A DNA stretch of 64,000 nucleotides. Origin: Auanema rhodensis (taxonomy: Eukaryota; Animalia; Nematoda). The translations under genes and the position numbers were made by a program. The DNA lies in NCBI GenBank assembly GCA_964057225.1, contig OZ059898.1:6262001-6326000 (forward strand). Direction: 5' to 3'. The notes under the pieces are model-generated. The model did not search any database. It was not told the origin of the DNA and saw only the letters and a list, made by a program, of their open reading frames with translations. This document shows positions 39,701 to 64,000 of this stretch, in pieces. Within the stretch, counting starts at the first letter, position 1, and the number at the start of each line of letters is the position of its first letter.

Positions 39701-41338
39701 AAAGATGTATAAAATATCTGCCGAAAATGATGAATATTTCAAATAGTATTCTTTATTTCTTTTTCTATCTTGTTATTTTCATAAGAAATGATGAAAACAT
39801 CATAAAAAAGGAAGTTATATCATGCAGTACCAGATAAAAGTTAAACAAAAAAATTGGTTAAGTTGACCAAGTTGGTGGGTATAAATGATTTGTTCCATTG
39901 ACCATAACCTAATTACTTTGATTTCCTATAAACAACTGAAGGTTTTTTTCTCACCTTCCATCTTTTACATCGATGGTACGAGCCCTACTTATTTTAAGTT
40001 TTACGAAATACAAAGTTATATCAGTTGTTTGTAATACAGCTAAAAGATATAATTTGTGGTTACGTCATTTCGTTTGAGCTGATTCAACTTATAGACGATT
40101 TTGGGATATGAAACGATCAGAAATCACATATCAATCTCATAAAAGATATATCTTTTCATTTGATTCGGGAAAAGAAAATTATTTTATGGATTTATCTTTT
40201 TACTTTTTTTTTCAGAGAGAAAATGTAATTCTACTTGTAATAACCGTGGAGCCTGTCTATACGATGGAGAAAAACCTCAATGTTACTGTAATTCCGGCTT
40301 TTTTGGTAAAACCTGTGAATTTGCCGGTAAGCCTTCAACAACAAATATATAATTTGAAAATATTTTCTAAATGTTTTATGAATTTAATCATTCAGATGCC
40401 AATGAATGTTTGGATAGACCTTGCCATTTGATGGCCCATTGTACAAACACTCCCGGAGCTTTTTCTTGCCAATGTTTCCCTGGATTTACCGGAGATGGAT
40501 ATCACTGTGCCGGTAAGTTTTTCCAAAATATAAATTCTTATAAATTTAAAATATATAAGAATAGTTAAATATTCAATCCTTTTTGTCATTTCTTCTCATC
40601 ATCACCATCTTCATCATCATTCAACACTTTTTTTTGCAACAAACCTATTAATTATAAGAAAATGTTTATAAGTTTCTTTAAGTTGTTTGCTATATAAGCC
40701 ATAAAACTTAAAAAAAAACATGACGGAAGTATAAAGATAGATTGGGTTTGTATGGACAAGTGGTCCCGAACCTTTAAAACCTTCTACTTTTTAGTCAAAA
40801 AAACATCTGTGAATGTCCTTGTTCTGAATTTGTCTTTGTAATACATACATCCAATTTTATATTTACGTAGTATAACATTAATTTATTCAAAAGAATTGAA
40901 AAGAATTACAGCACCACCCATATCGTCATTTCTCATTAATCTTCTTTCTTTGATTTTCATTTTTTTTGTTTTCATTTGAACATCTGTTGACATACGATTA
41001 CCTGAATATAACAAAAATGGCAGATTCTTTTAAATTATAATATATATTTATATGATTAAATATCCATTTAATTATATGACATTGACAAACTATTCAGTTA
41101 AAATAATTGGATAATGTTTCATAATTGTTTCAAAATAATTATTTGAAAAAACCTATTTAATATATAAACTATTATATATATATAGTATATATGATCTTAG
41201 ATATATTATAAGTATATTGTTACTTTCATATATATGTTTCAAGTTATTATAGTAGAAAAATATTATATAGTTTAAAATCATTCATATGATGATGATTCAA
41301 TAGGTACTTGTATTTACCTAGAAGACCACTGACCTTCT
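36720..41338. promoter_or_regulatory. Nuclear-receptor (NR5A/FTZ-F1-type) half-sites around the fbn-1 5' end
   Basis: TGACCTTG at 36741 inside a GC-rich patch, TGACCTTT at 37366, TGACCTTCA at 38352, CAAGGTCA at 39258 (intron 2) and TGACCTTC at 41330 (intron 4). Confidence 0.4.
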
Positions 41339-44300
41339 CTTAAATATTTAGTTAACTAGATAACATGAAGGCTAAAGTCTCATATACTATTTGCAAAATA
41401 ATTTTTTTTTCTCATTAAAATCTTTTTTTTCTTGTAACATTCAATTGAAATATAAGAGATCGGGAAAAAAAGACATAAAAGTGTCCAACCGTTCACATCA
41501 CAGCATGAAATCTAAATGAATATTCGTATATGGCATTTGACGTGTAAAATATTTATTATCACGTTAATTTATCTTTAATTTATTCTTTTATTATTTATGT
41601 AAATATATATATATTGTTAAGAACAATATATATATATAGCTATTTGTATCAAAATGTTTTTAAAAACATTGGAGATGACATGATGTCTTGGTGATTGAGT
41701 TGTTGCTAAAAGATTTATTTTTCAACATGACTACATGACCAATTTGCAGACATTATAAGAAATTTAACCTATAATTAGAATTTAGTTAAATGTCAGAAAA
41801 AACCTTGAATCTTTTGTAAAAAATGTTAATATATGTATGTATATACATATAAACTGAACGCAGTTTGCACTTATACAAGAAAATGAAGAAAAAAAATGAT
41901 TGACATGACCAGTTTTGATGTAATTTCTTTGAATGATTTTTGAACGAAAAACTTGATATTTTGTTTCAAAAAAAAATAATTTAACATATAATATATAAAT
42001 ACATTTCAGATATTGATGAATGTGCTTCAAACATGACCACATGTCCAGAAAATTCTATTTGTGTTAATCTTCCTGGAACTCATTACTGTAATTGTACAGA
42101 AGGATTTAGTCAAAAAGGAGAACACCCACATGCTAAATGTGTTGATATTGATGAATGTTCAAAGGGAATTCATAGCTGTAAATCAAATGAAATATGTGAA
42201 AATACTATTGGAAACTTCAATTGTGTTTCTAAATGTTCTGAGGGATATGAATACAAGAATGGAGAATGTGTTGATTTGAATGAATGCCGACGTGAGAACG
42301 TCTGTGATCCTCGAGCTGAATGTATAAATCTACCTGGAAGTTACAAATGTATCTGTGAAGATGGATTAGAAGGTGATGGAAAGACCTGTCAACGTATGTT
42401 ATCATCATGCATGTATATGGATAATATGATTTGATTTTCAGCAATCACTGATTGTACACAGCGAGACGATTTGTGTGATCGACATGCGCTCTGCATTCCA
42501 GCTCTTAAGATGTGCTATTGTCAAGCTGGATATGCTGGAGATGGAATTACTTGCAATGGTAACAAACATAATATTTTAATATTTTAATATTCTTATGTCA
42601 CAGATGTAAATGAATGTGAAGCATTGGAAAATCCCTGCCAAAATCAAAGAGGAGATCGATGTGTAAATATTGAAGGAGGATATATCTGTTGTGATGATGA
42701 CCAAGACGATGAACGCTGTATTCAAGACCAGGGAGCATTCTGCTCCGGCGGTTGTGGCTTGAATGCTTTCTGCGCTAATCAAACTTGTCAATGTCAACCT
42801 GGATTTATTGGTGACCCAAGCAAGAAATGTCTTGGTAAGTTGTGAATATGAAATACTTCAGTAAATCCATATATTACTTAGATGTTAATGAATGTGAGGT
42901 CGATAACATTTGTTCCGGAGTTGGACAATGGTGTATCAATGTTCTCGGCAGTTTCTTATGCTGTGGACCTGATAGCAAAGAAATTGAATGTCAAGGAGCT
43001 CATATCTTCAAAACTCTTGATGGACATCATCACATTTTAGAGCATAATAGCTCTGCAGCTGAAAGATGGATTGGTTCATCTGACAATGCTGTGGCTTCTG
43101 AAGCCGGAACAGTTCGTGTTGTAGGACAGTTACCTAGTGTTAGCGCAAGTTCAAGTAAGACTTTAATGAATTTGTTAAAAGCTCATGTTTTACATTCAGA
43201 ACGACCATGTACATCATATTGCCCACCAAATTCTGAATGCATTGACGGGTTCTGTATATGCTCCAAAGGTTATGGCGGTAATCCAAACTTTGGATGTGAA
43301 GGTATAAATTATAATAATAAATATAATTTACAAATAAAATATATAATTTAGATATTGATGAATGTAGAACAACTAAACCATGCTTAGAAGATAAAGATAA
43401 TTGGTGTGTCAATACTGATGGAGGATTTACTTGTTGTAATGTTAATAGTACTCAATCAGATTGTATAGGTATAACTATTAGATTTGTTTGAATTTCTAAT
43501 AATTCTACTATATAGGACTGGAAATTTCACCTGGAGGTCTCAGACTAACAGGCAGTTCCATTGAAAATGGTGAAACTGTTATATCGGCTTCTTTAAATGA
43601 ATCAATAGGATCAGAGATTATAAGTCATCATATTCAAGAAGTAATTTATTATTATTATAATATAATAATTAATTAATTAAAATTAATTTATAGAGCCGAA
43701 ACTTCTCAGAAGGTGGTCATATCATCTTAGTTAAGAGTAGAGTAAATAGTGGAGATAATATATTAAGTACAACAATTGGAGATAAAGGAATTGAAATTAT
43801 TCCAACTACCATAGGAACTGGAGAGATTGATAGTTTAGAAACAACTACACAGCTACCAGGAGTTGTTTCCACATTAGGCGGTACTAAAGCTACTGTTTCT
43901 ACGTCTATCCCAATCTCAGAGATTCCAGTTCATCCAACTGATATTCCAATTATTATTGAGGTTTATTATTAATTATTTTCTAATTTTTTATTTATAATAT
44001 TTAGGAATTGAAAAAAGGAATCAATCAACCTGATTTTATTCTTTCTGGTAAAGGAAAGATTGATATTGAAGGATCAGGAATTAAAGACGAACGTATTGTG
44101 GATGAACATGATCAAAGCGAAATCGAAGGTTCTGGTATTGATGGAGCTGAATCGAGCTCATTCACAAACTCATCTGGAGGAACATTTGTTGTTCAAACTG
44201 GCAAATTCGGAAGACCAATTCACATTCCAAATCTTCCTAATATTACCGAAATACTATCTAACGCACAGAAGCCAGAAGATACAAATAGCACTGCTACACA

Positions 44301-47300
44301 TGATATTCCTGAAGGAGCAATTGAAAACATCAAATCTGAAACTGGTGGAAAGATTATTATTCAAACTGGAGGAAAAGGACAATCTGGATCACAAATTATT
44401 TTGGGCAATGGATTACCTCAAGGAGTTCATCCAACAGGCTCAATTGTGCCCGATAACACCCATGTTCCTACTACATCTGATGGACATCTTCCTGATGGCT
44501 CTGAAGGCGCATCAAAGTTAAATTCTGAAGGTCGTGTCTTGATTTTCAGTGGAGGTAACGGAACAGTCCCAACTGAAAAACTCATCCATATACCTGATGG
44601 TGTTGTTTTATCAAATGAAACTAACAAAAGTATCATTTTACCTGATGGAAATGGATCATCAATCACCAATTCTGAAGGAAGACTAGTGATTGTGAAACCT
44701 GGAACAACAACTGAAGATGGAACATCGAACAAAAAAGGACCATCATCTGGAAACTTGAAAATTCACATCACAACCGCAGAAGAAACATCAACTCCTTCTG
44801 ATTTCACTGAACAAGTGGGATTAGAGATTGTGAATACTGGACCCACAAGTCCTCCTGATGTTGATATTACTGATAGCTTTGTTGGTGGTAAGGATACTAC
44901 TGATTTCCATACAACAACAAGCACTTTCACCACTGGAAGCCATGGATCAAGTGGACATGTTGAACAAGGTCAAGTTATCTTCTCGAAAACTCCCGAAGTT
45001 ACCTCAGAAGGTTCTGGCTTTGGAACCGAGCGGCCTAATGAGTTCACAAATCAACCTGAAGATCATATTCCAACCGATAAAGTTGAGCCAGGAGAACTTG
45101 GTTTGGAAATCATTGCAACTGGACCAACAGAACCCGCCTTGGAAACTACTACTTTCACAATCACAACACCTGAAACGCCAAGTACCAATGAACCAGATCT
45201 TGTTATTGTACCAGAGGATGGTTTTGAAACTCGGCCAAATGATAAGAATGCTAGTACAACAGGCCATGAACTTCCAGAAGGCAGTGGAGAACAACCAAAA
45301 ACAGATATTACTGATGGAACTGAAACAGAAAATATTTCTACAGGAGATCATCACCCAAAGCTGAATCGTACCATAATATCAAGTGGCGAAGTAGATCCAG
45401 TTGATGAAGATTTGATTGGTGGCCATGGAGAAAGTTCAGAATTTGCTTCTGGTGAACGAGGGCCTAACGAGTTGACTCCATCTACAACGGAAACACCATC
45501 ATCAACTGAAATGGGCTTAGAAATTGTCACTGATCAACTAACCACATCACAACCTGATATTTCTACAACCACTGAAGAATCATTAACTAAAATTACTGTC
45601 GGATCTGAAACAACTACTGTCGCTGTCCATTCTAGTACCAATGCTCCAGAACCCACATCAACCGAAGCAGAGTCTACCACTACTCTCGGATCTTCTAGCA
45701 CCAGTGCTCCAGAATCTACATCAACCGAAGCAGAGTCTACCACTACTTCCGGATCTTCTAGCACCAATGCTCCAGAATCCACATCAACCAAAGCAGAGTC
45801 TACCACTACTTCCGGATCTTCTAGCACCAGTGCTCCAGAATCCACATCAACCGAAGCAGAGTCTACCTCTACTTCCGGATCTTCCAGCACCAATGCTCCA
45901 GAACCCACATCAAGCGAAGCAGAGTCTACCACTACTCTCGGATCTTCTAGCACCAGTGCTCCAGAATCTACATCAACCGAAGCAGAGTCTACCACTACTT
46001 CCGGATCTTCTAGCACCAATGCTCCAGAATCCACATCAACCAAAGCAGAGTCTACCACTACTTCCGGATCTTCTAGCACCAGTGCTCCAGAATCCACATC
46101 AACCGAAGCAGAGTCTACCTCTACTTCCGGATCTTCCAGCACCAATGCTCCAGAACCCACATCAAGCGAAGCAGAGTCTACCACTGCTTCCGGATCTTCC
46201 AGCACCAGTGCTCCAGAATCCACATCAACCGAAGCAGAGTCTACCTCTACTTCCGTATCTTCCAGCACCAGTGCTCCAGAATCCACATCAACCGAAGCAG
46301 AGTCTACCTCTACTTCCGGATCTTCCAGCACCAGTGCTCCAGAATCCACATCAACCGAAGCAGAGTCTACCTCTACTTCCGGATCTTCTAGCACCAGTGC
46401 TCCAGAATCCACATCAACCGAAGCAGAGTCTACCTCTACTTCCGGATCTTCCAGCACCAGTGCTCCAGAATCCACATCAAACAAAGCAGAGTCTACCACT
46501 ACTTCCGGATCTTCTAGCACCAGTGCTCCAGAATCCACATCAACCGAAGCAGAGTCTACCTCTACTTCCGGATCTTCCAGCACCAGTGCTCCAGAATCCA
46601 CATCAACCAAAGCAGAGTCTACTACTACTTCCGGATCTTCTAGCACCAGTGCTCCAGAATCCACATCAACCGAAGCAGAGTCTACCTCTACTTCCGAATC
46701 TACCAGCACCAGTGCTCCAGAATCCACATCAACCGAAGCAGAGTCTACCACTGCTTCCGAATCTTCCAGCACCAGTGCTCCAGAATCCACATCAACCGAA
46801 GCAGAGTCTATCACTACTTCCGGATCTTCCAGCACCAGTGCTCCAGAATCCACATCAACTGAAGCTCAATCTACTGCTGCTTCCGGATCGTCTAGTACCA
46901 TCGCTCCAGAATCCACATCAACCGAAGCAGAGTCTATCACTACTTCCGGATCTTCCAGCACCAGTGCTCCAGAATCCACATCATCTGAAGCTCAATCTAC
47001 TGCTGCTTCCGGATCTTCTAGCACCAGTGCTCCAGAATCCACATCAACCGAAGCAGAGTCTACCACTACTTCCGGATCTTCCAGCACCAGTGCTCCAGAA
47101 TCCGCATCAACCGAAGCTCAATCTACTGCTGCTTCCGGATTGTCTAGTACCATCGCTCCTGAATCCACATCAACCGAAGCAGAGTCTACCACTACTCTTG
47201 GTGAAATTGCTAAGGGATCAATTGTTTCGTCCACATCCGCTTCTGTTACAACTGGAACTCCCGAAATTACCACTGAGTCAACTACAACCATAGAATCAAC

Positions 47301-50300
47301 AACAGCTGAAGTTATCTCATCTACAATCGCTAAACTTTCAATCCCACACAGCTCTACAACATCCCTGCCCGATGAAGATTTGACAGATGCCACAACCTTA
47401 CCAACGGATGAGACCACAGAAGGATCAGAATCTGCGATTACTGACGCCGCAACAGGAAAACAGAGTCGTCAACCAACAACGCTTGAACCTTTACTTGAAG
47501 TAACTACTCTACAAGAGACAACAACACCTTTAATTGCTACATTCACACCGGAAATTGATGAATCTGAGCCAACTGATGAAGAGAAAAAAGATGAATTTGC
47601 TTTGAGAACGACCACAATAAAGCCTGCAACCCTAGGACCAAATAATACAACCAAATGTATTAGTAGTGACGAGTGTGGAGATGATGCACAATGCGAACGA
47701 CGAACAGGTGCTTGTCGCTGTTATCCTGGATTTGAAGGATCCCCACCATCAATTCCATGTAAAGATGTTGATGAATGCGCAGAAGGCTTGCACAAATGTC
47801 ATCCATCAGCTCGTTGTCATAACTACAACGGTGGATATGCATGTTTCTGTCAAATGGGCTATCGCAAGAATAGCGATGGAGAATGTGTAGATATCAATGA
47901 ATGTGAAGAATCTCGAGGAACTTGCTGCAGTGTAAACGGTACATGTGTTAACAAACCTGGATCATATGGATGCGAATGCAAATCCGGATTTACTGGAGAT
48001 GGATATAACTGTATGCCAGTTGAGAAAAGAATCTGTCAAGACTTTGAATTTGATAAAGCTGGATGTGGTCATAATCATATGTGTATGATTGATGGTGAAG
48101 GAAATTTCGATTGTAACACATGCAAAATGGGATTCCAAATGATTAATGGATCATGTAGTGATATCAATGAATGTGCTACATCTGATTTACACATGTGTGA
48201 TGAGAATGCTAACTGTAACAACTTGCTTGGAACTTATGCTTGTCAATGTAAAGAAGGATACCGTGGAGATGGATTTATGTGCAAAGGTATCAACTATTAT
48301 TTCTTATAACTGTAATAATTTTTTAATTTAGATATTGATGAATGTGCTGAATCACATAGTCATTGTCATCCGCAAGCAATCTGCACCAACTTGCCAGGCT
48401 CATATAACTGTAGTTGCCCTGAAGGATTCACTGGGGAAGGACAAACAAGCTGTCAAAACCCAGTAGAAAAAAGCTGTGAAGATGTTGGAAAGTTCTGTGG
48501 ACGTGTTGAACATACTTCATGTTTATCCGTACGCATTTTCAACGGAAGCTTAGCTAGTGTATGCGAATGTGAACCCGGATACCGATACAATGCACATTCA
48601 AACAGCTGTGAAGGTATTTATCCATAGTTCAACTTATTTTTACATTTTTGATTTATAGATATCAATGAATGCATGGAAAACCGTCATAACTGTGATCCAG
48701 CTTCTGCTGTTTGTGTTAACACTGTAGGAGATTATACTTGTGAATGTGCCGAAGGATATGAAGGAGTTGGAGGAATCTGTGTTGATGTAAATGAATGTGA
48801 ACGTGGTCTTGCTGGTTGTCATTCTATGGCAATGTGCTTGAATCAACCTGGAAGCTGCGGATGTAAATGTATGGAAGGATTTACTGGAGATGGCATTCAA
48901 TGCACATGTATGTCAATTCGAATGACTAGCAATTTAATTTTTAAAAATATTTTAGCTACAACTCCTGATGATCTATGCACTGTTGAATGGCAAAGACTCT
49001 GTCGTTTGGAGAATAAAACTTGCCATATTGATGAAGAAGATGTTCCTCAATGTGGATCATGTATTGAAGGTCATCATCCAATCAATGGCTCTTGCCAACG
49101 TAAATTTCAAAAATATATAAGAAAATCATTAATTTCATTCATTTAAGCAGTTGAAGGTGCTGGAAATTGTGCTGATCGTACAATGAATAAATGTCATCCA
49201 AATGCTGAATGTATTGATGTACAACCTGGAAGACATTTCTGTACATGTAAAGTTGGATACATTGGAGATGGCATGAGATGTGACGGTGAGATATTTCATA
49301 AACAATATTTGAATGATATTCTTGCATGATTTATTTATTTTTTATACATATACATATAGTATATATGAATATGAAATATTTTCATATTCAGATATTGATG
49401 AATGTTCTGTGCCTGGTATATGTGATGAGCATGCTACTTGCACAAATCTTGAAGGATCTTTCACTTGCACATGTAAATCCGGATTTTTCGGAAATGGTTT
49501 TACTTGTAAAAATACTTCTACTAGCCTGTTGACCAATAGCACTCAGGGTAAGCTTGTTTACAAGCTTATTCATTTATATATTTTTATGTAACGCATGAGC
49601 TTCATTCAATACTTTAGGTCCAAATTGTCATTTGGATGCTGGATTATGTCACGAAAATGCTACATGTCATATGGACGGACATTGCAAATGCAATGATGGC
49701 TTTGAAGGAGATGGTATTATTATCTGTACTGGTATGTGATTTATCAGCTATATCGTTTTGAAACTTATCTGAATTTTCAGCAGAAAAGAACGGATCTTTA
49801 ACTGTCGGACCGGAACCACCTGTCCTTTTAAGACAAACAACAGCTCTTCCCAATGATCAAATTACTTCTCAAGGTACGTCGGAACATCCCATCACATCTG
49901 CACCGACAACAACAACTATCGTCAACGATACTAGCATGACTAAATCACCAACTGAAATCAATACGCCTGCTATGGAAAGAACGACGTTGCAGCCTGATGG
50001 CACGTCTACTTCTTTCGATTTCAAATCTGCACGAACCAACAACTTACCAGCAATAATGTCAACAACTCAATCAACCACACCAATAACAAAGCCAGAAATA
50101 CTGACGTTAACTTCAACTACATCTAATCCCAATAATTTAACGGCTTCTGAAACAGATAGCCATAATAATTCAAAGACAACGATTAAGCAAACGCTGTTAG
50201 CTTCAACAACATCGAAGACATTCGATACTATAACATCCACTACTCCACTAACTGAAGAGACATTCACTTTTTCCACAACAACACCAATCTCACAAAATAC

Positions 50301-53300: not shown

Positions 53301-56300
53301 AACAAGTTCACCTGGAGCTTCAGACTCCACAAAACCTTCCGATGGTTCTGAATTGTCAACTCCAAGCGGTGTCACAACAAGTTCACCTGGAGCTTCAGAC
53401 TCCACAAAACCTTCCGATGGTTCTGAATTGTCAACTCCAAGCGGTGTCACAACAAGTTCACCTGGAGCTTCAGATTCCACAAAACCTTCCGATGGTTCCG
53501 AATTGTCCACTCCAAGCAGTGTCACGACCAGTTCACCTGGAGCTTCAGATTCCACAAAACCTTCCGATGATTCCGAATTGTCCACTCCAAGCAGTGTTAC
53601 AACCAGTTCAACTGAATCTTCAGATCCCACCAAACCTTCCGATGATTCTGAATTGTCCACTCCAAGCAGAGGCAGCACTAGTTCACCTGGAGATTCAGAT
53701 TCCACCAAACCCTCTGATTTTTCTGATGTTTCAACTCCAAGCAGTGTTACAACCAGTTCACCTGGAGCTTCAGACTCCACAAAACCTTCCGAAGGTTTTG
53801 ATGTTTCAACTCCAAGCAGTGGTACAACCAGTTCAGCTCAAGCTTCAGAATCTGCAAAGCCTTCTGATGAAACTAAAACAACCTTTCATCCAAAACATCT
53901 GAGTTTTTCGAGAGTTCCTGATGAAAAATCAACCACACCAACTGAGAACATCGTAACAGCCATATCCCACATGATTTCGAACGTTTTCTCGACTACTCCA
54001 AGTGCTCCAACAACACGAATGGAGGATGTTATGGGATTGGAGATCATGAATCCCAATAAGTTTTCCCAAAATCCGAAATTCGTAGCGAAAACAACCACAG
54101 CTTCTGCCAAATCTGTCCTAGACTCTTCTACCCTTCCATCTTCTTCTGAAGTTTCAATTACTGAAGATTCTGGTGAAGAGCCGACTACTGTGATGGAGGA
54201 TAAGATGGGCTTGGAAATTATGATTCCACGAAGACCAAATGTAAAATCAACCTTAGGGCCACAGCTTACTTCCTCTTCAGCAAATCCGAGCGATACTGTT
54301 TCTGCTTCATCTACTTCTTCAGTAACTCCTGAAGGTGAAAGCACTGTCTCAGTTTCATCTGGCTCATCAACTACTCCAGGTTCTAAAGCTAATGTTGTAA
54401 CCTCTACCGGAGCTTCAGTCACTCCTGGAAGTGAAAGCACTGTCTCAGTGTCTTCCGAAACATCAACTACTCCAGGTTCTGAAGCTAATATTCCAACATC
54501 TACTGGAGCCTCAGTAACTCCTAGAGGTGAAAGCACTGTCTCAGATTCAACTGGAGCATCAACTACTCCAGGTTCTGAAGCTAATATTCCAACATCTACC
54601 GGAGCCTCAGTAACTCCTGGAAGTGAAAGCACTGTCTCAGCTCCATCTGGAACATTAACTACTCCAGGTTCTGAATCTAATATTCCAACATCTACTGGAG
54701 CCTCAGTAACTCCTAGAGGTGAAAGCACTGTCTCAGATTCAACTGGAGCATCAACTACTCCAGGTTCTGAAGCTAATATTCCAACATCTACCGGAGCCTC
54801 AGTAGCTCCTGGAAGTGAAAGCACTGTCTCAGCTCCATCTGGAACATCAACTACCCTTGGTTCTAAAGCTAATGTTGTAACCTCTACCGGAGCTTCAGTC
54901 ACTCCTGGAAGTGAAAGCACTGTCTCAGTGTCTTCTGAAACATCAACTACTCCAGGTTCTGAATCGAATATTCCAACCTCTACCGGAACTTCAGTAACTC
55001 CTGGAGGTGAAAGCACTGTCTCAGCTCCATCTGGAACATCAACAACTCCAGGTTCTAAAGCTAATGTTGTAACTTCTACCGGAGCTTCAGTAACTCCTGG
55101 AAGTGAAAGCACTGTCTCAGATTCAACTGGAGCTTCAACTACTCCAGGTTCTGAATCTAATATTCCAACCTCTACAGGAATTTCAGTAACTCCTGGAGAT
55201 GAAAGCACTGTCTCAGCTCTATCTGGAACATCAACAACTCTAGGTTCTAAAGCTAATGTTGTAACCTCTACCGGAGCTTCAGTAACTCCTGGAAGTGAAA
55301 GCACTGTCTCAACTGGAGCTTCAACTACTCCAGGTTCTGAATCTAATATTCCAACATCTACTGGAGCTTCAGTAACTCCTGGAGGTGAAAGCACTGTCTC
55401 AGCTCCATCTGGAACATCAACAACTCCAGGTTCTAAAGCTAATGTTGTAACCTCTACCGGAGCTTCAGTAACTCCTGGAGGAGAAAGCACTGTCTCAGCT
55501 TCATCTGGAACATCAAGTACTCCAGGTTCTGAATCGAATATTCCAACCTCTACCGGAACTTCAGTAACTCCTGGAGGTGAAAGCACTGTCTCAGCTCCAT
55601 CTGAAACATCAACAACTCCAGGCTCTGAATCGAATATTCCAACCTCTACCGGAACTTCAGTAACTCCTGGAAGTGAAAGCACTGTCTCAGATTCAACTGG
55701 AGCTTCAACTACTCCAGGTTCTGGTTCTAATATTCCAACCTCTACCGGAACTTCAGTAACTCCTGGAGGTGAAAGCACTGTCTCAGCTCCATCTGAAACA
55801 TCAACAACTCCAGGCTCTGAATCGAATATTCCAACCTCTACCGGAACTTCAGTAACTCCTGGAAGTGAAAGCACTGTCTCAGATTCAACTGAAACATCAA
55901 CAACTCCAGGCTCTGAATCGAATATTCCAACCTCTACTGGAGCTTCAGTAACTCCTGGAGGTGAAAGCACTGTCTCAGCTCCATCTGGAACATCAACAAC
56001 TCCAGGCTCTGAATCGAATATTCCAACCTCTACTGGAGCTTCAGTAACTCCTGGAGGTGAAAGCACTGTCTCAGCTCCATCTGGAACATCAACAACTCCA
56101 GGCTCTGAATCGAATATTCCAACCTCTACCGGAACTTCAGTAACTCCTGGAAGTGAAAGCACTGTCTCAGTGTCTTCCGAAACATCAACTACTCCAGGTT
56201 CTGAAGCTAATATTCCAACATCTACTGGAGCCTCAGTAACTCCTAGAGGTGAAAGCACTGTCTCAGATTCAACTGGAGCATCAACTACTCCAGGTTCTGA

Positions 56301-59300
56301 AGCTAATATTCCAACATCTACCGGAGCCTCAGTAACTCCTGGAAGTGAAAGCACTGTCTCAGCTCCATCTGGAACATTAACTACTCCAGGTTCTGAATCT
56401 AATATTCCAACATCTACTGGAGCCTCAGTAACTCCTAGAGGTGAAAGCACTGTCTCAGATTCAACTGGAGCTTCAACTACTCCAGGTTCTGGTTCTAATA
56501 TTCCAACCTCTACTGGAGCTTCAGTAACTCCTGGAGGTGAAAGCACTGTCTCAGCTCCATCTGGAACATCAACAACTCCAGGCTCTGAATCGAATATTCC
56601 AACCTCTACTGGAGCTTCAGTAACTCCTGGAGGTGAAAGCACTGTCTCAGCTCCATCTGGAACATCAACAACTCCAGGCTCTGAATCGAATATTCCAACC
56701 TCTACCGGAACTTCAGTAACTCCTGGAGATGAAAGCACTGTCTCAGCTTCATCTGGAACATCAACAACTCCAGGCTCTGAATCGAATATTCCAACCTCTA
56801 CCGGAACTTCAGTAACTCCTGGAGATGAAAGCACTGTCTCAGCTTCATCTGGACCATCAATCACGTCTACCACTTTTTCCTCCCAATTTACCAATGGCGT
56901 ATCTACAACATCTTTGAAACCTGCAAAGCTCGAGCGCTCTACATCCTCACCTTTGTTTGAAGGAACAACTTCGAAAGAGCGTACACGAGCGACATCAAGT
57001 GGAATAGCTATTGAAATAGATGAAAATGAAAATGTAAAAATTGTTAGCCGAATAACTGGGAAGCCATTGTCACTCGATATAGTATCTGCGACTCCAACAT
57101 TCACTACAGGACATAACACCAAAACAACTTCAAATTCCGATACCTTTACTAATATTCCTAACTTTATTGAATCATCAACACATTTACCAAAAGTATCTGT
57201 GAATGAAACAAATAAGAATTCACAAAATAACGCTACTACTCCATCAATCTCAACTAAAACAACATTAATATCATCTGAAGGACCGTTATCACCAACACAT
57301 TTCACAACGGCTTCACCTTCAAATAATATTGTTTCAACACTCGCTAATTCTCATAAAAAGCCAGGTATAATATTTAAATTTAATTGCTTAGAATATATGT
57401 TTTTGCTTAATAGTATATATAATTTCACTTTTTCATTTTTATTTCTATTTCAGTTTCAGATGATATATCTGTCACTACTGTTGCACCTGATAGCACCACT
57501 TCACCTTCTGTACTCACACCTGATACTCTATCATCACCTAAGATCACTAGTATCGATGGTGATACTTCACAACGTCTTAATGGCGTTAATAACGTTCATG
57601 TTAATCTTAATAACTCACTTTCTATTCACGTATCTGTTTCTGAATCATCAGAAACAGATTTCAAAGATGCACACAAGCCTTCTACTGCACTCACTCAACC
57701 ACCACCAAGATCACACGATGCTGAACATATCAAGTCTAAGTTAACTATCATCGACAACAGTTCTGAAAGAGATATTAATCGCAATCCAAATTTACAATTT
57801 GAGAATAGCACTAGTGTCAGACCTGATGTTGATGATTTGATTAGAGCGTCAAAACCAATAGATTCAATCACTACTAGCATGCCACCTGTATTTGTTCCTG
57901 ATGAAGAAGAAACTGAACATGTAGAGAATGTTGAAAAACATCCACAAACCTCTATTAGCACCAATCAATCATCAATTTCTTCAAATACAACCACTATGCC
58001 TGTAACATCATTCACTTCAAAGGCTCCTAACTCATTCTCTTCTGTCAAAACTACACTTGTTGTCCTTCACTTGTTTTCAACACAAGCACCAAGCAATCAG
58101 ACAATGATCACTGATGATCTCAGTCCTAATCAAAACAATTCAGAAACAACTCGTGGTCCACCTAGTATGACACCTCCTTCTTTGATTGATCCAACAACTG
58201 AATCATCTATTTCCACTGAGAATGCTTATACTGGAACTGCCGAAAGTACTGAGCAGCCAGCAACTACAACGCAGTCAACAACAACATCATCAGCAACAAC
58301 TCCATCAACAACCACGACAGCAGCAGTTACGGAAGGTGAGCCAGATATGCATCACGAATCTAAACACACGCCAAGCACTTTCACATCACTTAGCACAACA
58401 GGCTCAATGATGAACACAAATACATCAATTGACAAAAACAATATCACAAATGCACCAAACACTGTTGATCAAAATACTTTAAAACCTTTAAATACTTTAT
58501 CAACTGAAGTTTCTATGATTGAAACCACAACAAATCAATTAGTTTTTACAACAACTAATGATTTAACTAAAACTTCAACTTTTCGAGATCAATCTGATAT
58601 AAGCAATTCAATCAAAAACCCCAATACGTCTTCTGATATAAAAGAAAATCTTCAGAATACATTTTCAACACCAATGACTTCAAAAGAGTCAAAATTCACT
58701 ACTCAATCTACTGAGACCTCCTCTTTACCAGATGATTTTGATTCAAGATCATCAGTTTCTGAGAGTATTACAACCATAACTTCAATTGACACAACAAAAA
58801 GTTTTGAGAATTTTCAATCAACAACGCCTACTGCTGACCCTCAAACTCTTGAAGAGCTAAACAAATCAAAAACAAACAACCCAACTACCGTAACAGCTTC
58901 TCCAGCTGATCTGCCAGAATCTAAGATTAATTCGGATGTTCGAGTTCATGATCCAAGTAGTAGAACAACCCCATCACCTGAAAAAATTGAGTTTAATATT
59001 CCTTCTAATGGTTCCAACACCACAACTCCAAAGAGTGGTATAACCACGAAACCAAGAGCTTCGGATTCCACAAAACCTTCCGATGGTTCCGAATTGTCCA
59101 CTCCAAGCAGTGTCACGACCAGTTCATCTGGAGCTTCAGACTCCACAAAACCTTCCGATGATTCTGAATTGTCAATTCCAAGCGGTGTCACAACCAGTTC
59201 ACCTGGAGCTTCAGATTCCACCAAACCTTCCGATGGTTCCGAATTGTCCACTCCAAGCAGTGTCACAACCAGTTCACCTGGAGCTTCAGACTCCACAAAA

Positions 59301-62300
59301 TCTTCCGATAGTTCTGAAGTCACAACTCCAATGAGTTTCACAACCAGTTCACCTGGAGATTCAAAATCCACAAAACCTTCCGATGGTTCTGAATTGTCAA
59401 CTCCAAGCAGTGTCACAACCAGTTCACCTGGAGCTTCAGACTCCACAAAATCTTCCGATAGTTCTGAAGCCAAAACTCCAAGCAGTGGAACAACCATTCC
59501 TCTTGGAGTATCAGAATCCATAATATCTTCCGATAGTTCTGAAGCCACTACTCCAAGCGGTGTCACAACCAGTTCACCTGGAGCTTCAGACTTCACAAAG
59601 CCTTCCCATAGTTCCGAAGCTACAACACCAGGTACTGGCAAAACCAGTTCACCTGGAAGTTCCGATTCCACAAAACCTTCTGATGGTTCTGAAGTCTCAA
59701 CTTCAATGAGTAGCACAACCAGTTCACCTGGTGCTTCAGATTCGACCAAACATTCCGATGGTTCTGAAGTCTCAACTCCAATGAGTGGCACAACCAGTTC
59801 ACCTGGAGCTTCCGATTCCACAAAACCTTCTGATGGTTCTGAAGTCTCAACTCCAATGAGTGGCACAACCAGTTCACCTGGAGCTTCAGAATCCACAAAA
59901 CCTTCTGATGGTTCTGAAGTCTCAACTTCAATGAGTAGCACAACCAGTTCACCTGGAGCTTCAGATTCGACCGAACATTCCCATAGTTCCGAAGCTACAA
60001 CACCAGGTACTGGCAAAACCAGTTCACCTGGAAGTTCCGATTCCACAAAACCTTCTGATGGTTCTGAAGTCTCAACTTCAATGAGTAGCACAACCAGTTC
60101 ACCTGGAGCTTCAGATTCGACCAAACATTCCGATGGTTCTGAAGTCTCAACTCCAATGAGTGGCACAACCAGTTCACCTGGAGCTTCCGATTCCACAAAA
60201 CCTTCTGATGGTTTTGAAGTCTCAACTCCAATGAGTGGCACAACCAGTTCACCTGGAGCTTCAGATTCAACTAAACATTCCGATGGTTCTGAAGTCTCAA
60301 CTCCAATGAGTGGCACAACCAGTTCACCTGGAGCTTCCGATTCCACAAAACCTTCTGATGGTTCTGAAGTCTCAACTCCAATGAGTGGCTCAACCAGTTC
60401 ACCTGGAGCTTCCGATTCCACAAAACCTTCTGATGGTTCTGAAGTCTCAACTCCAATGAGTGGCACAACCAGTTCACCTGGAGCTTCAGATTCGACCAAA
60501 CATTCCGATGGTTCTGAAGCCACAACTCCAAGCAGTGGCAGAACCAGTTCACCTGGAGCTTCAGATTCCACAAAACCTTCTGATGGTTCTGAAGTCTCAA
60601 CTCCAATGAGTGGCACAACCAGTTCACCTGGAGCTTCAGATTCGACCAAACATTCCGATGGTTCTGAAGCCACAACTCCAATGAGTGGCTCAACCAGTTC
60701 ACCTGGAGCTTCCGATTCCACAAAACCTTCTGATGGTTCTGAAGTCTCAACTCCAATGAGTGGCTCAACCAGTTCACCTGGAGCTTCCGATTCCACAAAA
60801 CCTTCTGATGGTTCTGAAGTCTCAACTCCAATGAGTGGCACAACCAGTTCACCTGGAGCTTCCGATTCCACAAAACCTTCCGATGCTTCTGAAGTCTCAA
60901 CTCCAATGAGTGGCACAACCAGTTCACCTGAAGCTTCCGATTCCACAAAACCTTCTGATGGTTCTGAAGTCTCAACTCCAATGAGTGGCACAACCAGTTC
61001 ACCTGGAGCTTCAGATTCGACCAAACATTCCGATGGTTCTGAAGCCACAACTCCAATGAGTGGCTCAACCAGTTCACCTGGAGGTTCCGATTCCACAAAA
61101 CCTTCCGATGGTTCTGAAGCCACAACTCCAGGTAGTGACACAACCAGTTCACCTGGAGCTTCAGGTTCCACAAAACTTTCAGATGGTTCTAAAGCCAAAA
61201 CTCCAAGCAGTGGAACAACCATTCCATTTGGAGATTCAGAATCTAAGACAACTTCCAATGGTTCCGAAGTCACAACTTCAAACAGTGTCACAACCAGTTC
61301 ACCTGGAGCTTCCGATTCCACAAAACCTTCTGATGGTTCTGAAGTCTCAACTCCAAACAGTGTCACAACCAGTTCACCTGGAGCTTCCGATTCCACAAAA
61401 CCTTCTGATGGTTCTGAAGTCTCAACTCCAATGAGTGGCACAACCAGTTCACCTGGAGCTTCAGAATCCACAAAATCTTCCGATAGTTCTGAAGCCACAA
61501 CTCCAAGCAGTGGAACAACCATTCCATTTGGAGATTCAGAATCTAAGACAACTTCCAATGGTTCCGAAGTCACAACTTCAAACAGTGTCACAACCAGTTC
61601 ACCTGGAGCTTCCGATTCCACAAAACCTTCTGATGGTTCTGAAGTCTCAACTCCAATGAGTGGCACAACCAGTTCACCTAGAGCTTCAGACTTCACAAAG
61701 CCTTCCCATAGTTCCGAAGCTACAACATCAGGTACTGGCAAAACCAGTTCACCTGGAGGTTCCGAAGCTTCAACACCAGGTACTGGCAAAACCAGTTCAC
61801 CTGGAGCTTCAGATTTCACAAAACATTCCGATGGTTCTGGAGCCACAACTCCAAGCAGTGGCAGAACCAGTTTACCTGGAGCTTCAGATTCGACCAAACC
61901 TTCCGATGGTTCCGAATTGTCGACTCCAAGCAGTGTCACAACCAGTTTGCCTGGAGCTTCAGATTCCACAAAACCTTCTCATGTTTCTGAAGCCACAACT
62001 CCAGGTAGTGGAACAACCACTTCTCTTGGAGATTCAGAATCTACGACAACTTCCAATGCTTCTGAAGTCTCAAATTCAAGCAGTGTCACAACCACTTCCC
62101 CTAGAGCTTCAGAATCCACAAAATCTTCCGATGATTCCGAATTGTCGACTCCAAGCAGTGTCACAACCAGTTTGCCTGGAGCTTCAGAATCTGCAAAGCC
62201 TTCTGATGAAACTAAAACAACCTTTCATCCAAAACATCTGAGTTTTTCGAGAGTTCCTGATGAAAAATCAACCACACCAACTGAGAACATCGTAACAGCC

Positions 62301-64000
62301 ATATCCCACATGATTTCGAACGTTTTCTCGACTACTCCAAGTGCTCCAACAACACGAATGGAGGATGTTATGGGATTGGAGATCATGAATCCCAATAAGT
62401 TTTCCCAAAATCCGAAATTCGTAGCGAAAACAACCACAGCTTCTGCCAAATCTGTCCTAGACTCTTCTACCCTTCCATCTTCTTCTGAAGTTTCAATTAC
62501 TGAAGATTCTGGTGAAGAGCCGACTACTGTGATGGAGGATAAGATGGGCTTGGAAATTATGATTCCACGAAGACCAAATGTAAAATCAACCTTAGGGCCA
62601 CAGCTTACTTCCTCTTCAGCAAATCCGAGCGATACTGTTTCTGCTTCATCTACTTCAGTAACTCCTGAAGGTGAAAGCACTGTCTCAGTTTCATCCGGCT
62701 CATCAACTACTCCAGGTTCTGAATCTAATATTCCAACATCTACCGGAGCTTCAGTAACCCCTGGAGATGAAAGCCCTGTCTCAACTTCAACTGGAGCATC
62801 AACTACTCCAGGTTCTGAATCTAATATTCCAACATCTACTGGAGCTTCAGTAACTCCTGGAGATGAAAGTACTGTCTCAACTTCAACTGTAACTTCAACC
62901 AAGTCTGTTGTTGAAGCCTCGACTCCAACTTCTACTAGAGGTTCCGGAGAAGAGCTAACTACCGTAATGGAGGATAAGATGGGTTTGGAGATTATGAATC
63001 CACGAGGAACACAGGTGACATTCTCATCAAAACCGACATTCTCTGGTGATGTAGCATCCACTTCTTCTCCAACCGGAGTACAAACTACTGGAGATGCTGG
63101 AATCAGCTCATCATCACCACCTAGAGGTTCAACAGCTCCTGGTGATGTAGCATCTACTTCTTCTCCAACTGGAGTACAAACTACTGGAGATGCTGGAATC
63201 AGCTCATCATCACCACCTAGAGGTTCAACAGCTCCTGGTGATGTAGCATCCACTTCTTCTCCATCTGGAGTACAAACTACTGGAGATGCTGGAATCAGCT
63301 CATCATCACCACCTAGAGGTTCAACAGCTCCTGGTGATGTAGCATCCACTTCTTCTCCATCTGGAGTACAAACTACTGGAGATGCTGGAATCAGCTCATC
63401 ATCACCACCTAGAGGTTCAACAGCTCCTGGTGATGTAGCATCCACTTCTTCTCCAACCGGAGTACAAACTACTGGAGATGCTGGAATCAGCTCATCATCA
63501 CCACCTAGAGGTTCAACAGCTCCTGGTGATGTAGCATCCACTTCTTCTCCAACCGGAGTACAAACTACTGGAGATGCTGGAATCAGCTCATCATCACCAC
63601 CTAGAGGTTCAACAGCTCCTGGTGATGTAGCATCCACTTCTTCTCCAACCGGAGTACAAACTACTGGAGATGCTGGAATCAGCTCATCATTACCTAGAGG
63701 TTCAACAGCTCCTGGTGATGTAGCATCCACTTCTTCTCCATCTGGAGTACAAACTACTGGAGTTGCTGGAATCAGCTCATCATCATCACCTAGAGGTTCA
63801 ACAGCTCCTGGTGATGTAGCGTCCACTTCTTCTCCAACTGGAGTACAAACTACTGGAGATGCTGGAATCAGCTCATCATCACCACCTAGAGGTTCAACAG
63901 CTCCTGGTGATGTAGCATCCACTTCTTCTCCATCCGGAGTACAAACTACTGGAGATGCTGGAATCAGCTCATCATTACCTAGAGGTTCAACAGCTCCTGG
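38769..64000 (+). CDS. fbn-1: Fibrillin-like apical extracellular matrix protein (cbEGF arrays plus giant Ser/Thr mucin-like regions); 3' end (expected ZP/TM part) lies beyond the window
   Basis: Signal peptide [24 protein letters not shown]; N-terminal [52 protein letters not shown], recognised as the FBN-1 N-terminus; many D(I/V)(D/N)EC calcium-binding EGF repeats; RGD at 42648-42656. About 20 exons, including 44005-48286, 49781-57364 and 57454->64000. The last is open to the window edge and absent from the ORF track. Confidence 0.88.
45630..47200 (+). repeat. Coding tandem array R1: 63-bp (21-aa) unit, ~25 copies
   Basis: Unit [21 protein letters not shown]; ACCGAAGCAGAGTCTACC recurs at 45661, 45724 and onward. 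Confidence 0.95.
50625..53870 (+). repeat. Coding tandem array R2: 75-bp (25-aa) unit, ~43 copies
   Basis: Unit [25 protein letters not shown]; TCCACAAAACC recurs at 50701, 50776 and onward. Confidence 0.95.
54290..56855 (+). repeat. Coding tandem array R3: 96-bp (32-aa) unit made of two related 16-aa halves, ~26-27 copies
   Basis: Unit [32 protein letters not shown]; GAAAGCACTGTCTCAG recurs at 54337, 54433 and onward. Confidence 0.95.
59040..62200 (+). repeat. Coding tandem array R4: second, more diverged array of the 75-bp R2 family, ~41 copies
   Basis: Same CCTGGAGCTTC..TCCACAAAACC backbone as R2, with the variant [11 protein letters not shown] (ATGAGTGGC) not seen in R2. Confidence 0.93.
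62181..62720 (+). repeat. Near-identical direct duplicate of the non-repetitive spacer at 53842-54384
   Basis: Offset 8339 bp. By eye the copies are identical apart from one 3-bp indel (STSSV vs STSV) and one synonymous TCT/TCC change near the end. Confidence 0.92.
63042..64000 (+). repeat. Coding tandem array R5: 96-bp (32-aa) unit, ~10 copies, truncated by the window edge
   Basis: Unit [32 protein letters not shown]; GGTGATGTAGCATC recurs at 63045, 63141 and onward. Two units are 3 bp shorter. Confidence 0.95.

What the first reader, a model, noticed from the sequence alone, without database searches (positions are those of the whole stretch)
43516..62993. Recurrent GLEI short linear motif punctuating the disordered regions of FBN-1
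Seen: CIGLEISP (~43516), DKGIEIIP (43787), [13 protein letters not shown] (44818), [12 protein letters not shown] (45100), EMGLEIVTD (45514), [12 protein letters not shown] (54034, 62373), [12 protein letters not shown] (54208, 62547) and [12 protein letters not shown] (62982). That is 10 instances, 8 of them independent of the recent duplication. They use different codons and unrelated flanks, and all lie in unique spacers, never inside the arrays. Inference: this suggests protein-level selection for a repeated beta-strand docking, self-assembly or cleavage motif spaced by glycosylated linkers. I do not know of a described function.
Basis: partly seen in the sequence, partly recalled or inferred. 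Interest (0 to 1): 0.72.

Follow-up and report, generated by a model that had tools for sequence, protein, structure and literature searches.

The report
Conserved GLEI motif in nematode FBN-1
A four-residue Gly-Leu-Glu-Ile signature recurs, far more often than chance allows, in the unstructured sugar-bearing stretches of the giant skin-matrix protein FBN-1 in this worm and in 26 other nematode FBN-1 proteins, which marks an undescribed, testable functional site in a protein needed for embryo shape and moulting.

Summary
All ten G[LI]EI copies sit in frame at the stated coordinates. Transcript contigs confirm the first copy, whose Gly codon is split by a 47-nt intron. About 0.07 copies are expected by composition, and 10 are seen (8 without a 100%-identical recent duplicate).

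The gene is the single FBN-1 orthologue of a clade V nematode. Its layout is cbEGF blocks, two Ser/Thr-rich regions that are hugely expanded here, a ZP domain, a furin-like site and a TM segment.

The deciding evidence comes from other species:
- 27 nematode FBN-1 proteins from clades III-V carry 94 copies against 3.1 expected. All but one lie in Cys-free stretches.
- GLEI is the most widely shared 4-mer in those stretches (26 of 27 sequences, counting the window).
- 94 non-nematode fibrillin-like proteins carry none.
- The copy right after an EGF Cys (C-I-G-L-E-I) keeps its position across clades III-V.

The consensus is E-φ-G-L-E-I-[SVT]-[GKA]. Glu is replaced by Met, Val or Ile, not by Asp, and AlphaFold finds no autonomous fold. 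I read it as an amphipathic β-strand linear motif under purifying selection, most likely a docking or assembly strand. That function is inferred, not shown. A cleavage site is the main rival. I found no published description of the motif.

The parts
43516..43526 (+). GLEI copy 1 (C-I-G|L-E-I-S-P). The first base of the Gly codon is 43468, before the intron.
   Evidence: Splice joint seen in transcript contigs. Position conserved after the EGF Cys in Toxocara, Heterorhabditis, Haemonchus, Steinernema, Caenorhabditis and filariae.
43469..43515 (+). 47-nt GT..AG intron that splits the Gly codon of copy 1
   Evidence: sequence. (joint 43463->43511, cut +5, in 3 runs).
43787..43798 (+). GIEI copy 2 (DKGIEIIP), 73 residues after copy 1
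   Evidence: The same 71-74-residue spacing is seen in C. bovis, Steinernema, Heterorhabditis and Haemonchus.
43516..43960 (+). Conserved post-EGF module (two exons, 43516-43640 and 43694-43960), bounded by copies 1 and 2. It contains the block RNFS-GG-x-IIL-x-K-x-R-V-x-S.
   Evidence: Alignments A1 and A2 across clades III-V. No Pfam family. AlphaFold gives pLDDT <50 here but models both motifs as strands.
44818..44829 (+). GLEI copy 3 ([13 protein letters not shown])
45100..45111 (+). GLEI copy 4 ([12 protein letters not shown])
45514..45525 (+). GLEI copy 5 (EMGLEIVTD)
54034..54045 (+). GLEI copy 6 ([12 protein letters not shown]), in the spacer between the 75-nt and 96-nt arrays
54208..54219 (+). 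GLEI copy 7 ([12 protein letters not shown]), same spacer
62373..62384 (+). GLEI copy 8, a recent duplicate of copy 6
   Evidence: 100% DNA identity of the spacer
62547..62558 (+). GLEI copy 9, a recent duplicate of copy 7
62982..62993 (+). GLEI copy 10 ([12 protein letters not shown]), just before the last 96-nt array. An older paralogue of copy 7 with different codons.
44068..45288 (+). Four E-G-S-G sites (44068, 44125, 45007, 45277) matching the nematode chondroitin attachment motif E/D-G/A-S-G
   Evidence: Motif from PMC8418075. In C. elegans P0182, EGSG at 1077 places Ser1079, the published site.
40164..43468 (+). First block of calcium-binding EGF exons of the gene (signal peptide near 38.8 kb)
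45630..47196 (+). 63-nt (21-aa) Ser/Thr array, 24.9 copies, with no GLEI
47640..49731 (+). Second block of EGF exons
49781..57364 (+). Giant Ser/Thr/Pro exon holding a 75-nt array (50608-53869) and a 96-nt array (54317-56860)
57460..64000 (+). Second giant Ser/Thr/Pro exon. It runs on to 67109 in extended coordinates and is followed by EGF exons, a ZP domain, a furin-like site and a TM segment.

Best explanation
SHOWN. The window holds most of the single FBN-1 (fibrillin-like, ZP-domain, chondroitin-proteoglycan) gene of a clade V nematode. Its two Ser/Thr-rich regions carry a short linear motif with the consensus E-phi-G-L-E-I-[S/V/T]-[G/K/A]. FBN-1 proteins of nematode clades III, IV and V keep this motif in several copies each, while the surrounding linkers change freely in sequence and length. 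That is purifying selection on the peptide.

INFERRED. The motif is a 6-8-residue amphipathic beta-strand. The residues phi(-1), Leu and Ile lie on one face; Glu(-2), Gly, Glu and Ser/Val lie on the other. It sits in otherwise disordered, glycosylated chain. I propose it works by strand docking (beta-augmentation) onto a folded partner, or onto other copies, in the apical matrix. Several copies per molecule would make FBN-1 a multivalent, non-covalent cross-linker of the embryonic sheath and pre-cuticle. Candidate partners are ZP or EGF modules of FBN-1 itself or of other pre-cuticle proteins.
For: The motif is real and expressed.

Enrichment in this gene: 10 copies against 0.07 expected, and 0 of 3,000 shuffles exceeded 2.

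Conservation across species:
- 94 copies against 3.1 expected in 27 FBN-1 proteins, and none in 94 non-nematode fibrillin-like proteins (263k residues).
- GLEI ranks first among all 4-mers by number of sequences holding it (26 of 27, counting the window) in Cys-free stretches.
- 88 copies remain after removing those 60% or more identical over 24 residues. Information is confined to positions -2 to +5.
- The copy after the EGF Cys keeps its position in clades III-V, and a second copy follows 71-74 residues later.
- Between two Bursaphelenchus species the ETPQPxEQGL[MV]I[NS]GxD block is nearly invariant while the linkers diverge.

Beta-strand reading:
- Glu is replaced by Met (15), Val (11) or Ile (4), but Asp occurs at most once. 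Leu gives way to Ile or Val, and Ile to Leu. This is the pattern of strand packing, not of a charge or metal site.
- AlphaFold models both module copies as strands.
- AlphaFold finds no autonomous fold for a motif array, mean pLDDT 39.7. So the motif is linear and needs a partner.

Independence from chondroitin sites: five species keep GLEI and have no E/D-G/A-S-G motif, and there is no consistent proximity.
Against: The beta-strand assignments come from low-confidence models (pLDDT <50). Individual sites turn over between genera, so copy number rather than position is conserved outside the first two copies. Some copy number arises simply from unit duplication. The Met and Val variants are concentrated in a few lineages (Bursaphelenchus, Mesorhabditis), so the substitution argument rests on few independent events. 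A protease could recognise the same extended strand.
Confidence: 0.45

Rival explanations
1. The motif is a proteolytic processing site. A secreted matrix protease (astacin/NAS, ADAMTS or MMP type) would cut at or next to G-L-E-I, so that the transient sheath or pre-cuticle can be trimmed or removed at each moult. By analogy, aggrecanases cut chondroitin-sulfate proteoglycans after Glu inside their glycosaminoglycan-bearing regions (own knowledge, not tested here).
For: FBN-1 is a transient matrix component needed for moulting, and it is a chondroitin proteoglycan. The motifs sit in exposed disordered linkers between glycosylated arrays and at array boundaries. The core is short and sharply defined, with a preferred Glu at -2, as in many protease sites.
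Against: Glu is replaced by Met, Val or Ile and almost never by Asp. That does not fit acid-specific astacin or aggrecanase-type recognition. There is no Pro at P3 as in MMP sites. I found no published evidence of FBN-1 cleavage other than the furin site.
Confidence: 0.2
2. The copies are strands of a fold that forms only on assembly. The conserved hydrophobic islands (GLEI plus the GG-x-III-x-x-G type) would come together into a beta-rich structure within or between FBN-1 molecules when the ZP domain polymerises, rather than docking onto a separate partner.
For: The first ~75-110 residues after the EGF form a conserved module bounded by two copies at fixed spacing. A second family of hydrophobic islands recurs nearby. 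AlphaFold draws six strands in the module.
Against: pLDDT is <50 throughout the module with a 24-sequence alignment. The motif array is predicted fully disordered. Spacing between later copies varies from 11 to several thousand residues.
Confidence: 0.17
3. The motif is a determinant for glycosylation. For example, it might prime or position chondroitin (xylosyltransferase) or O-glycan addition on nearby Ser/Thr.
For: About a quarter of copies are followed by S-G (GLEISG...). In Caenorhabditis the copies lie 20-40 residues from E-G-S-G sites, including the mapped Ser1079.
Against: No copy in this window is followed by S-G. Five species keep GLEI without any E/D-G/A-S-G motif, and distances to such motifs are inconsistent. 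The core does not match the published E/D-G/A-S-G rule.
Confidence: 0.06
4. The motif has no function. It would be a passenger of old internal duplications of a spacer unit, and is frequent only because the units were copied.
For: The MEDxMGLEIMxP units and the GLEI[VI]xTGPT pair are clearly paralogous. Two copies are a very recent duplicate. Bursaphelenchus amplifies a motif-bearing unit in tandem.
Against: The core persists in 26 of 27 FBN-1 sequences across three nematode clades while flanks beyond +/-3 residues carry no information. Codons differ between copies. Motif columns are more conserved than other columns in four of five within-group alignments.
Confidence: 0.04

Closest known systems
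C. elegans FBN-1 / CPG-16 (fibrillin-related ZP protein of the embryonic sheath and pre-cuticle; PMC4395870, PMC11632948)
   Same: The domain order is the same: cbEGF block, Ser/Thr-rich region, EGF block, Ser/Thr/Pro-rich region, EGFs, ZP, furin-like site, TM. Both have chondroitin-type E-G-S-G sites. C. elegans FBN-1 (P0182) itself carries four GLEI copies, at 658, 1117, 1137 and 1158.
   Different: Here the two low-complexity regions are expanded to about 7,000 residues by five tandem arrays, against 834 + 179 residues in C. elegans. C. elegans has lost 'GL' from the first, post-EGF copy (C-IEI-T). The papers I could read describe these regions only as Ser/Thr-rich and do not mention the motif.
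Short linear motifs (SLiMs) in intrinsically disordered regions, such as beta-augmentation ligands
   Same: The core is 4-8 residues and lies in predicted disorder. It is conserved while the flanks are free. There are several copies per protein, and individual sites turn over in evolution.
   Different: This motif is extracellular and sits in a mucin/proteoglycan-like chain. I found no matching pattern in the searchable literature. No partner domain is known.
ZP-module hydrophobic patches (internal and external hydrophobic patch; strand exchange during ZP polymerisation). Own knowledge of uromodulin and ZP3 work.
   Same: These are short Gly-preceded hydrophobic beta-strands in a ZP protein, and they act by strand complementation. 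FBN-1 has a ZP module and a furin-like site.
   Different: The GLEI copies lie thousands of residues upstream of the ZP module and are multi-copy.
Aggrecan and versican type chondroitin-sulfate proteoglycans, with aggrecanase sites in the GAG-bearing region (own knowledge)
   Same: Giant secreted proteoglycan core with tandem Ser/Thr/Gly arrays, acidic S-G attachment sites, and short conserved Glu-containing islands between them.
   Different: There is no sequence homology. Glu in GLEI is replaceable by Met or Val, unlike the P1 Glu of aggrecanase sites.
Ig-CAM integrin-binding loop G-[LI]-[ED]-[TS]-[PS] (ICAM, VCAM, MAdCAM; own knowledge)
   Same: The first three residues, G-[LI]-E, are the same.
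   Different: In Ig-CAMs the acidic residue is essential and Asp is accepted. Here Asp is virtually absent and Met, Val and Ile are accepted. Position 4 is Ile, not Ser/Thr. The context is a disordered chain, not an Ig loop.
Drosophila Dumpy (giant EGF + ZP apical matrix protein with a PIGSFEAST low-complexity region; own knowledge)
   Same: Overall logic: EGF modules, a giant low-complexity region, and a ZP-TM anchor in a tension-bearing apical matrix.
   Different: Dumpy itself was not examined. The two crustacean EGF-ZP relatives retrieved have no Cys-free region and no GLEI.

Membership tests
FBN-1 (nematode fibrillin-like ZP protein) | Multiple calcium-binding EGF modules | tested here: met
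   EGF_CA, EGF_3 and cEGF score above Pfam cut-offs on exons at 41985-42431, 47305-48306, 48319-48624 and 48652-49143, and on downstream exons.
FBN-1 (nematode fibrillin-like ZP protein) | C-terminal ZP (cuticlin-type) module, followed by a furin-type site and a TM segment | tested here: met
   CUT_N (PF25057) scores 34.1 bits, above its 27-bit cut-off, on L003:4362-4592. An RRR...RFRFRR cluster and a hydrophobic TM segment are read directly from the sequence. Only one such locus exists in the genome.
FBN-1 (nematode fibrillin-like ZP protein) | Orthology to named FBN-1 proteins | tested here: met
   The ZP exon gives 82% identity to Ancylostoma caninum and 80% to a Nippostrongylus protein named 'FBN-1A.1 (inferred by orthology)'. 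The orthologue set retrieved with the Steinernema FBN-1 query also holds the C. elegans protein and BMA-FBN-1.
FBN-1 (nematode fibrillin-like ZP protein) | Ser/Thr-rich regions between EGF blocks that carry chondroitin attachment motifs (E/D-G/A-S-G) | tested here: met
   The layout matches PMC4395870. There are four EGSG sites at 44068-45288. The motif rule comes from PMC8418075. Actual glycosylation cannot be tested here.
Short linear motif in a disordered region | Short conserved core with uninformative flanks | tested here: met
   Relative entropy is 3.3-4.2 bits at the four core positions (fixed by the search pattern), 0.9-1.2 bits at -2, -1, +4 and +5, and 0.6 or less elsewhere. This is based on 88 non-redundant copies.
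Short linear motif in a disordered region | Lies in intrinsically disordered sequence and is not part of an autonomous fold | tested here: met
   All but one of the 94 orthologue copies lie in Cys-free stretches of 100 or more residues. No Pfam family matches. AlphaFold gives mean pLDDT 39.7 on a motif array and <50 on the post-EGF module. The alignments were shallow, so a fold is not excluded.
Short linear motif in a disordered region | A defined partner domain or enzyme that recognises it | not testable with these tools
   No multimer modelling or binding data were available.
Chondroitin / GAG attachment site | Ser-Gly preceded by Gly/Ala and an acidic residue (E/D-G/A-S-G) | tested here: not met
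   The core has no Ser. Only about a quarter of copies are followed by S-G, and none in this window. Species without any such motif still keep GLEI.
SEA-type autoproteolytic site (G|SVVV) | A nucleophilic Ser/Thr/Cys right after Gly, inside a ~110-residue folded SEA domain | tested here: not met
   The residue after Gly is Leu or Ile in all copies. There is no SEA or other Pfam domain. Copies can lie as little as 11-13 residues apart.
Integrin-binding Ig-CAM acidic loop | Essential acidic residue (Asp or Glu) at position 3 | tested here: not met
   Counts are GLEI 89, GLMI 15, GLVI 11, GLII 4, and GLDI at most 1.

The most novel reading that the evidence does not exclude
The GLEI strands are donor strands for ZP-module polymerisation or capping. 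Each copy could insert into the groove vacated by the external hydrophobic patch of a ZP module, either FBN-1's own or that of NOAH-1/2, LET-653 or a cuticlin. One FBN-1 molecule would then tie several ZP filaments together across long glycosylated spacers. This would be a new way of building and tuning a transient apical matrix, with spacer length (hugely expanded in this species) setting the mesh size.
Probability: 0.12. Interest if true: 0.85.

Novelty: new member of a known kind. Interest (0 to 1): 0.62.

Why it matters
FBN-1 is essential for the embryonic epidermis to resist mechanical force, for moulting, and for vulva and alae shaping in C. elegans. Yet its large Ser/Thr-rich regions have been described only by composition.

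A sharply defined, multi-copy motif kept across clade III, IV and V nematodes gives the first specific, mutable handle on what those regions do. These clades include filarial, ascarid, strongylid, entomopathogenic and plant-parasitic species. C. elegans has only four copies (residues 658, 1117, 1137, 1158), so the hypothesis can be tested directly by genome editing and by peptide pull-downs.

More generally, it is an example of an extracellular linear motif embedded in a mucin/proteoglycan chain. This class is poorly catalogued compared with intracellular motifs.

Tried and rejected
1. Two word-index protein searches returned nothing. The queries were the motif-bearing regions (window 44005-48306, residues 1-540; window 49762-57741, residues 1365-1505). 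The blank is not informative, because the tool only sees proteins 0.55-1.75 times the query length and the real proteins are far longer. Orthologues were reached through the ZP exon instead, and then with a Steinernema orthologue as query.

2. AlphaFold on the post-EGF module gave a confident EGF but pLDDT <50 for the module (24-sequence alignment). AlphaFold on a Bursaphelenchus motif array gave mean pLDDT 39.7. Neither supports a folded domain. The alignments were shallow, so this is inconclusive for fold-on-assembly. I ran no structure search because the models were too poor.

3. Coupling to chondroitin sites was rejected. Distances to the nearest E/D-G/A-S-G motif are inconsistent, and five species have none.

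4. SEA-like autoproteolysis, an integrin-type acidic loop and an MMP-type P-x-x-phi site were considered from memory. The residue pattern rules them out.

5. Literature. The primary chondroitin glycoproteome paper (PMC5766738) is not held, so its site and motif were taken from a later review by the same group. A full-text search for 'GLEI' with 'nematode' returned only surname noise.

6. Column-wise conservation in MAFFT alignments of the disordered regions shows motif columns more conserved in four of five groups. The alignments are unreliable, so I give this little weight.

7. A joined (spliced) protein model of the gene was not searched or folded.

The reads tool was given 3,001 letters.

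Full report
WHAT IS IN THE WINDOW.

The + strand from about 38.8 kb to the end of the window, and on for another 5.7 kb of the contig, is one very large gene. The window is G000:C6:6262001-6326000.

In order, the gene has:
- a signal peptide;
- calcium-binding EGF exons at 40164-43468 (Pfam EGF_CA, EGF_3, cEGF);
- a first Ser/Thr-rich region, 43516-47640, which includes a 63-nt x 24.9 array;
- a second EGF block, 47640-49731;
- two giant Ser/Thr/Pro exons, 49781-57364 and 57460-67109 in extended coordinates. They hold 75-nt, 96-nt, 75-nt and 96-nt arrays;
- more EGF exons, then a cuticlin-type ZP module (CUT_N above cut-off);
- a basic furin-like cluster and a transmembrane segment.

This is the layout described for C. 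elegans FBN-1: Ser/Thr region at 560-1393, Ser/Thr/Pro region at 1920-2098, ZP, furin site, TM (PMC4395870).

The ZP exon finds Ancylostoma caninum (82%) and Nippostrongylus brasiliensis 'FBN-1A.1 (inferred by orthology)' (80%) as best hits. The source is therefore a clade V, strongylid-like nematode. The genome has only one such locus.

I did not search or fold a joined spliced model. Exons were handled one at a time by reference.

THE OBSERVATION.

All ten G[LI]EI copies are in frame at the stated places.

The first copy, C-I-G|L-E-I-S-P, needs a 47-nt GT..AG intron (43469-43515) that splits the Gly codon. Spliced transcript contigs from three runs of one study carry exactly this joint, and also the introns 43641-43693 and 43961-44004. 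So the peptide is real at the mRNA level.

By composition, 0.074 copies are expected in the 7,086 non-EGF residues and 0.075 in the 2,477 residues of non-array spacers. Ten are seen, and no shuffle in 3,000 exceeded two. With the recent duplicate removed, GLEI (7 copies) is still the commonest 4-mer of the spacers. No copy lies in an array.

Codons differ between copies.

Two copies (62373, 62547) belong to a roughly 520-nt spacer that is 100% identical to 53842-54360 apart from one 3-nt indel. The flanking arrays are only 83-90% identical.

The three distinct TT[RV]MED[VK]MGLEIM[NI]P units are paralogues, and this unit occurs nowhere else in the genome. The two GLEI[VI]xTGPT copies are also related.

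CONSERVATION IN ORTHOLOGUES, THE DECIDING TEST.

Full-length FBN-1 proteins were recovered through the ZP exon and through a second search seeded with a Steinernema orthologue. They come from:
- Caenorhabditis (four species, including C. elegans);
- Mesorhabditis (two species), Heterorhabditis, Haemonchus;
- Steinernema (two species), Panagrolaimus, Bursaphelenchus (two species), Aphelenchoides;
- Toxocara, Ascaris, Syphacia and eight filariae.

Together, 27 proteins hold 94 G[LI]EI against 3.1 expected. In contrast, 94 non-nematode fibrillin-like proteins from the same search (263k residues) hold none.

An unbiased count of all 4-mers in Cys-free stretches of 100 or more residues ranks GLEI first by number of sequences (26 of 27, counting the window; 91 copies). 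It ranks ahead of every Ser/Thr word. All but one of the copies lie in such stretches.

The copy that directly follows the last Cys of an EGF module (C-[IL]-G-L-E-I-[SVA]) keeps its position in Toxocara, the filariae, Steinernema, Heterorhabditis, Haemonchus, Caenorhabditis and this window. A second copy follows 71-74 residues later in several of them. Between the two lies a conserved block of the type RNFS-GG-x-III-x-RGK-I-x-S.

Between two Bursaphelenchus species a block ETPQPxEQGL[MV]I[NS]GxD is nearly invariant, while the linkers between blocks differ in both length and sequence.

Clade I orthologues (Trichinella, Trichuris) have no Ser/Thr-rich region and no GLEI. The same is true of two crustacean EGF-ZP proteins. 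The motif therefore seems to have arisen together with the low-complexity regions in the lineage leading to clades III-V.

SHAPE OF THE MOTIF.

From 88 copies that are less than 60% identical over 24 residues, the consensus is E(-2), hydrophobic(-1), G, L, E, I, [S/V/T/I](+4), [G/K/A](+5). Nothing informative lies further out.

One-substitution neighbours show what is tolerated:
- GLEI 89 (0.8 expected);
- GIEI 12, GVEI 6, GLEL 9;
- GLMI 15, GLVI 11, GLII 4;
- GLDI at most 1.

Glu is thus exchangeable with long beta-branched or aliphatic residues but not with Asp. The hydrophobic residues fall at -1, +1 and +3. This is the signature of an amphipathic beta-strand, not of a metal-binding or acid-specific site.

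AlphaFold models both copies of the post-EGF module as strands, but with pLDDT <50. It predicts a motif array to be fully disordered. Pfam has nothing for these regions, including C. elegans residues 560-1395. The element therefore behaves as a linear motif in a disordered, glycosylated chain.

RELATION TO KNOWN FEATURES.

FBN-1 is CPG-16, a chondroitin proteoglycan with a mapped site at Ser1079. The nematode attachment rule is E/D-G/A-S-G (PMC11632948, PMC8418075, PMC7544507). In the C. elegans protein retrieved here, EGSG at 1077 places Ser1079 exactly. Three GLEI copies follow 38-80 residues later.

The window has four EGSG sites between 44068 and 45288. GLEI is nevertheless independent of these sites. 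No copy here is followed by S-G, five species keep GLEI without any such motif, and distances are inconsistent.

I found no description of the motif in the FBN-1 papers and reviews I could read, nor by full-text search.

MECHANISM.

Shown: the motif exists, is expressed, and is under purifying selection across three nematode clades.

Inferred: it is an amphipathic beta-strand that works by docking onto a folded partner or onto other copies. This would give a multivalent, non-covalent cross-linker whose arm lengths are set by the glycosylated arrays. I put about 0.45 on this reading.

Rivals:
- a protease site used to trim or remove the transient matrix (0.2). The Glu-to-Met/Val tolerance and the lack of Asp speak against it;
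- strands of a fold that forms only on assembly (0.17);
- a glycosylation determinant (0.06);
- a functionless passenger of duplications (0.04), which the orthologue data contradict.

VERDICT.

The finding is a new, well-defined linear motif in a known and genetically tractable matrix protein. Its function is unknown, but it can be tested directly in C. elegans, which has only four copies.

Noticed in passing
window 44068-44079, 44125-44136, 45007-45018, 45277-45288: Four E-G-S-G sites match the nematode chondroitin attachment rule E/D-G/A-S-G. In C. elegans FBN-1 the same word at 1077 contains the published site Ser1079. EGSG is itself among the most widely shared 4-mers of FBN-1 disordered regions (20 of 27 sequences).
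   Followed up: partly
window 43712, 44176, 44344, 44530, 44677: A second family of hydrophobic islands recurs in the first Ser/Thr region: [ST]-x-G-G/R-x-phi-phi-phi-x-x-G ([45 protein letters not shown]). Orthologues have counterparts, such as RNFSGGxIIIxRGK and IRVRITTLGE in Caenorhabditis.
   Followed up: partly
window 43516-43960: A module of about 75-110 residues directly after an atypical EGF (with a CC pair) is conserved across clades III-V but matches no Pfam family. AlphaFold cannot fold it with 24 sequences.
   Followed up: partly
window 53842-54360 and 62181-62700: The roughly 520-nt spacer is 100% identical in the two copies apart from a 3-nt indel, while the adjoining arrays are 83-90% identical. 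This points to very recent gene conversion or duplication, or to an assembly artefact in a repeat-rich gene.
   Followed up: partly
window 45686 onward: Transcript contigs in all three runs leave the genome at 45686 and continue with sequence that matches about 47240. They skip the whole 63-nt array. This is most likely repeat collapse in short-read assembly, but an array-less isoform is not excluded.
   Followed up: no
P0169 and P0180 (Haemonchus contortus): Haemonchus has two FBN-1-like genes on one chromosome-scale contig. One has five GLEI copies and the conserved post-EGF copy. The other has only one GIEI. The present genome has a single ZP locus of this type.
   Followed up: partly
P0019 2489-3213; P0154 4941-5362 (Bursaphelenchus): In Bursaphelenchus the motif, as GL[MV]I, sits inside tandem units of about 50 residues (ETPQPxEQGLMINGxDIHPE). 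So 'never inside arrays' holds for this window but not for the family.
   Followed up: yes
P0285 residue 460 (Trichuris muris): The clade I orthologue lacks GLEI but has S-E-C-L-G-I-V-I-F directly after an EGF Cys. This may be a relative of the post-EGF copy.
   Followed up: no
window 11723-12379, + strand: Open frames carry a G-Y-G pore signature and hydrophobic helices that look like a two-pore-domain potassium channel gene. It is unrelated to the finding.
   Followed up: no
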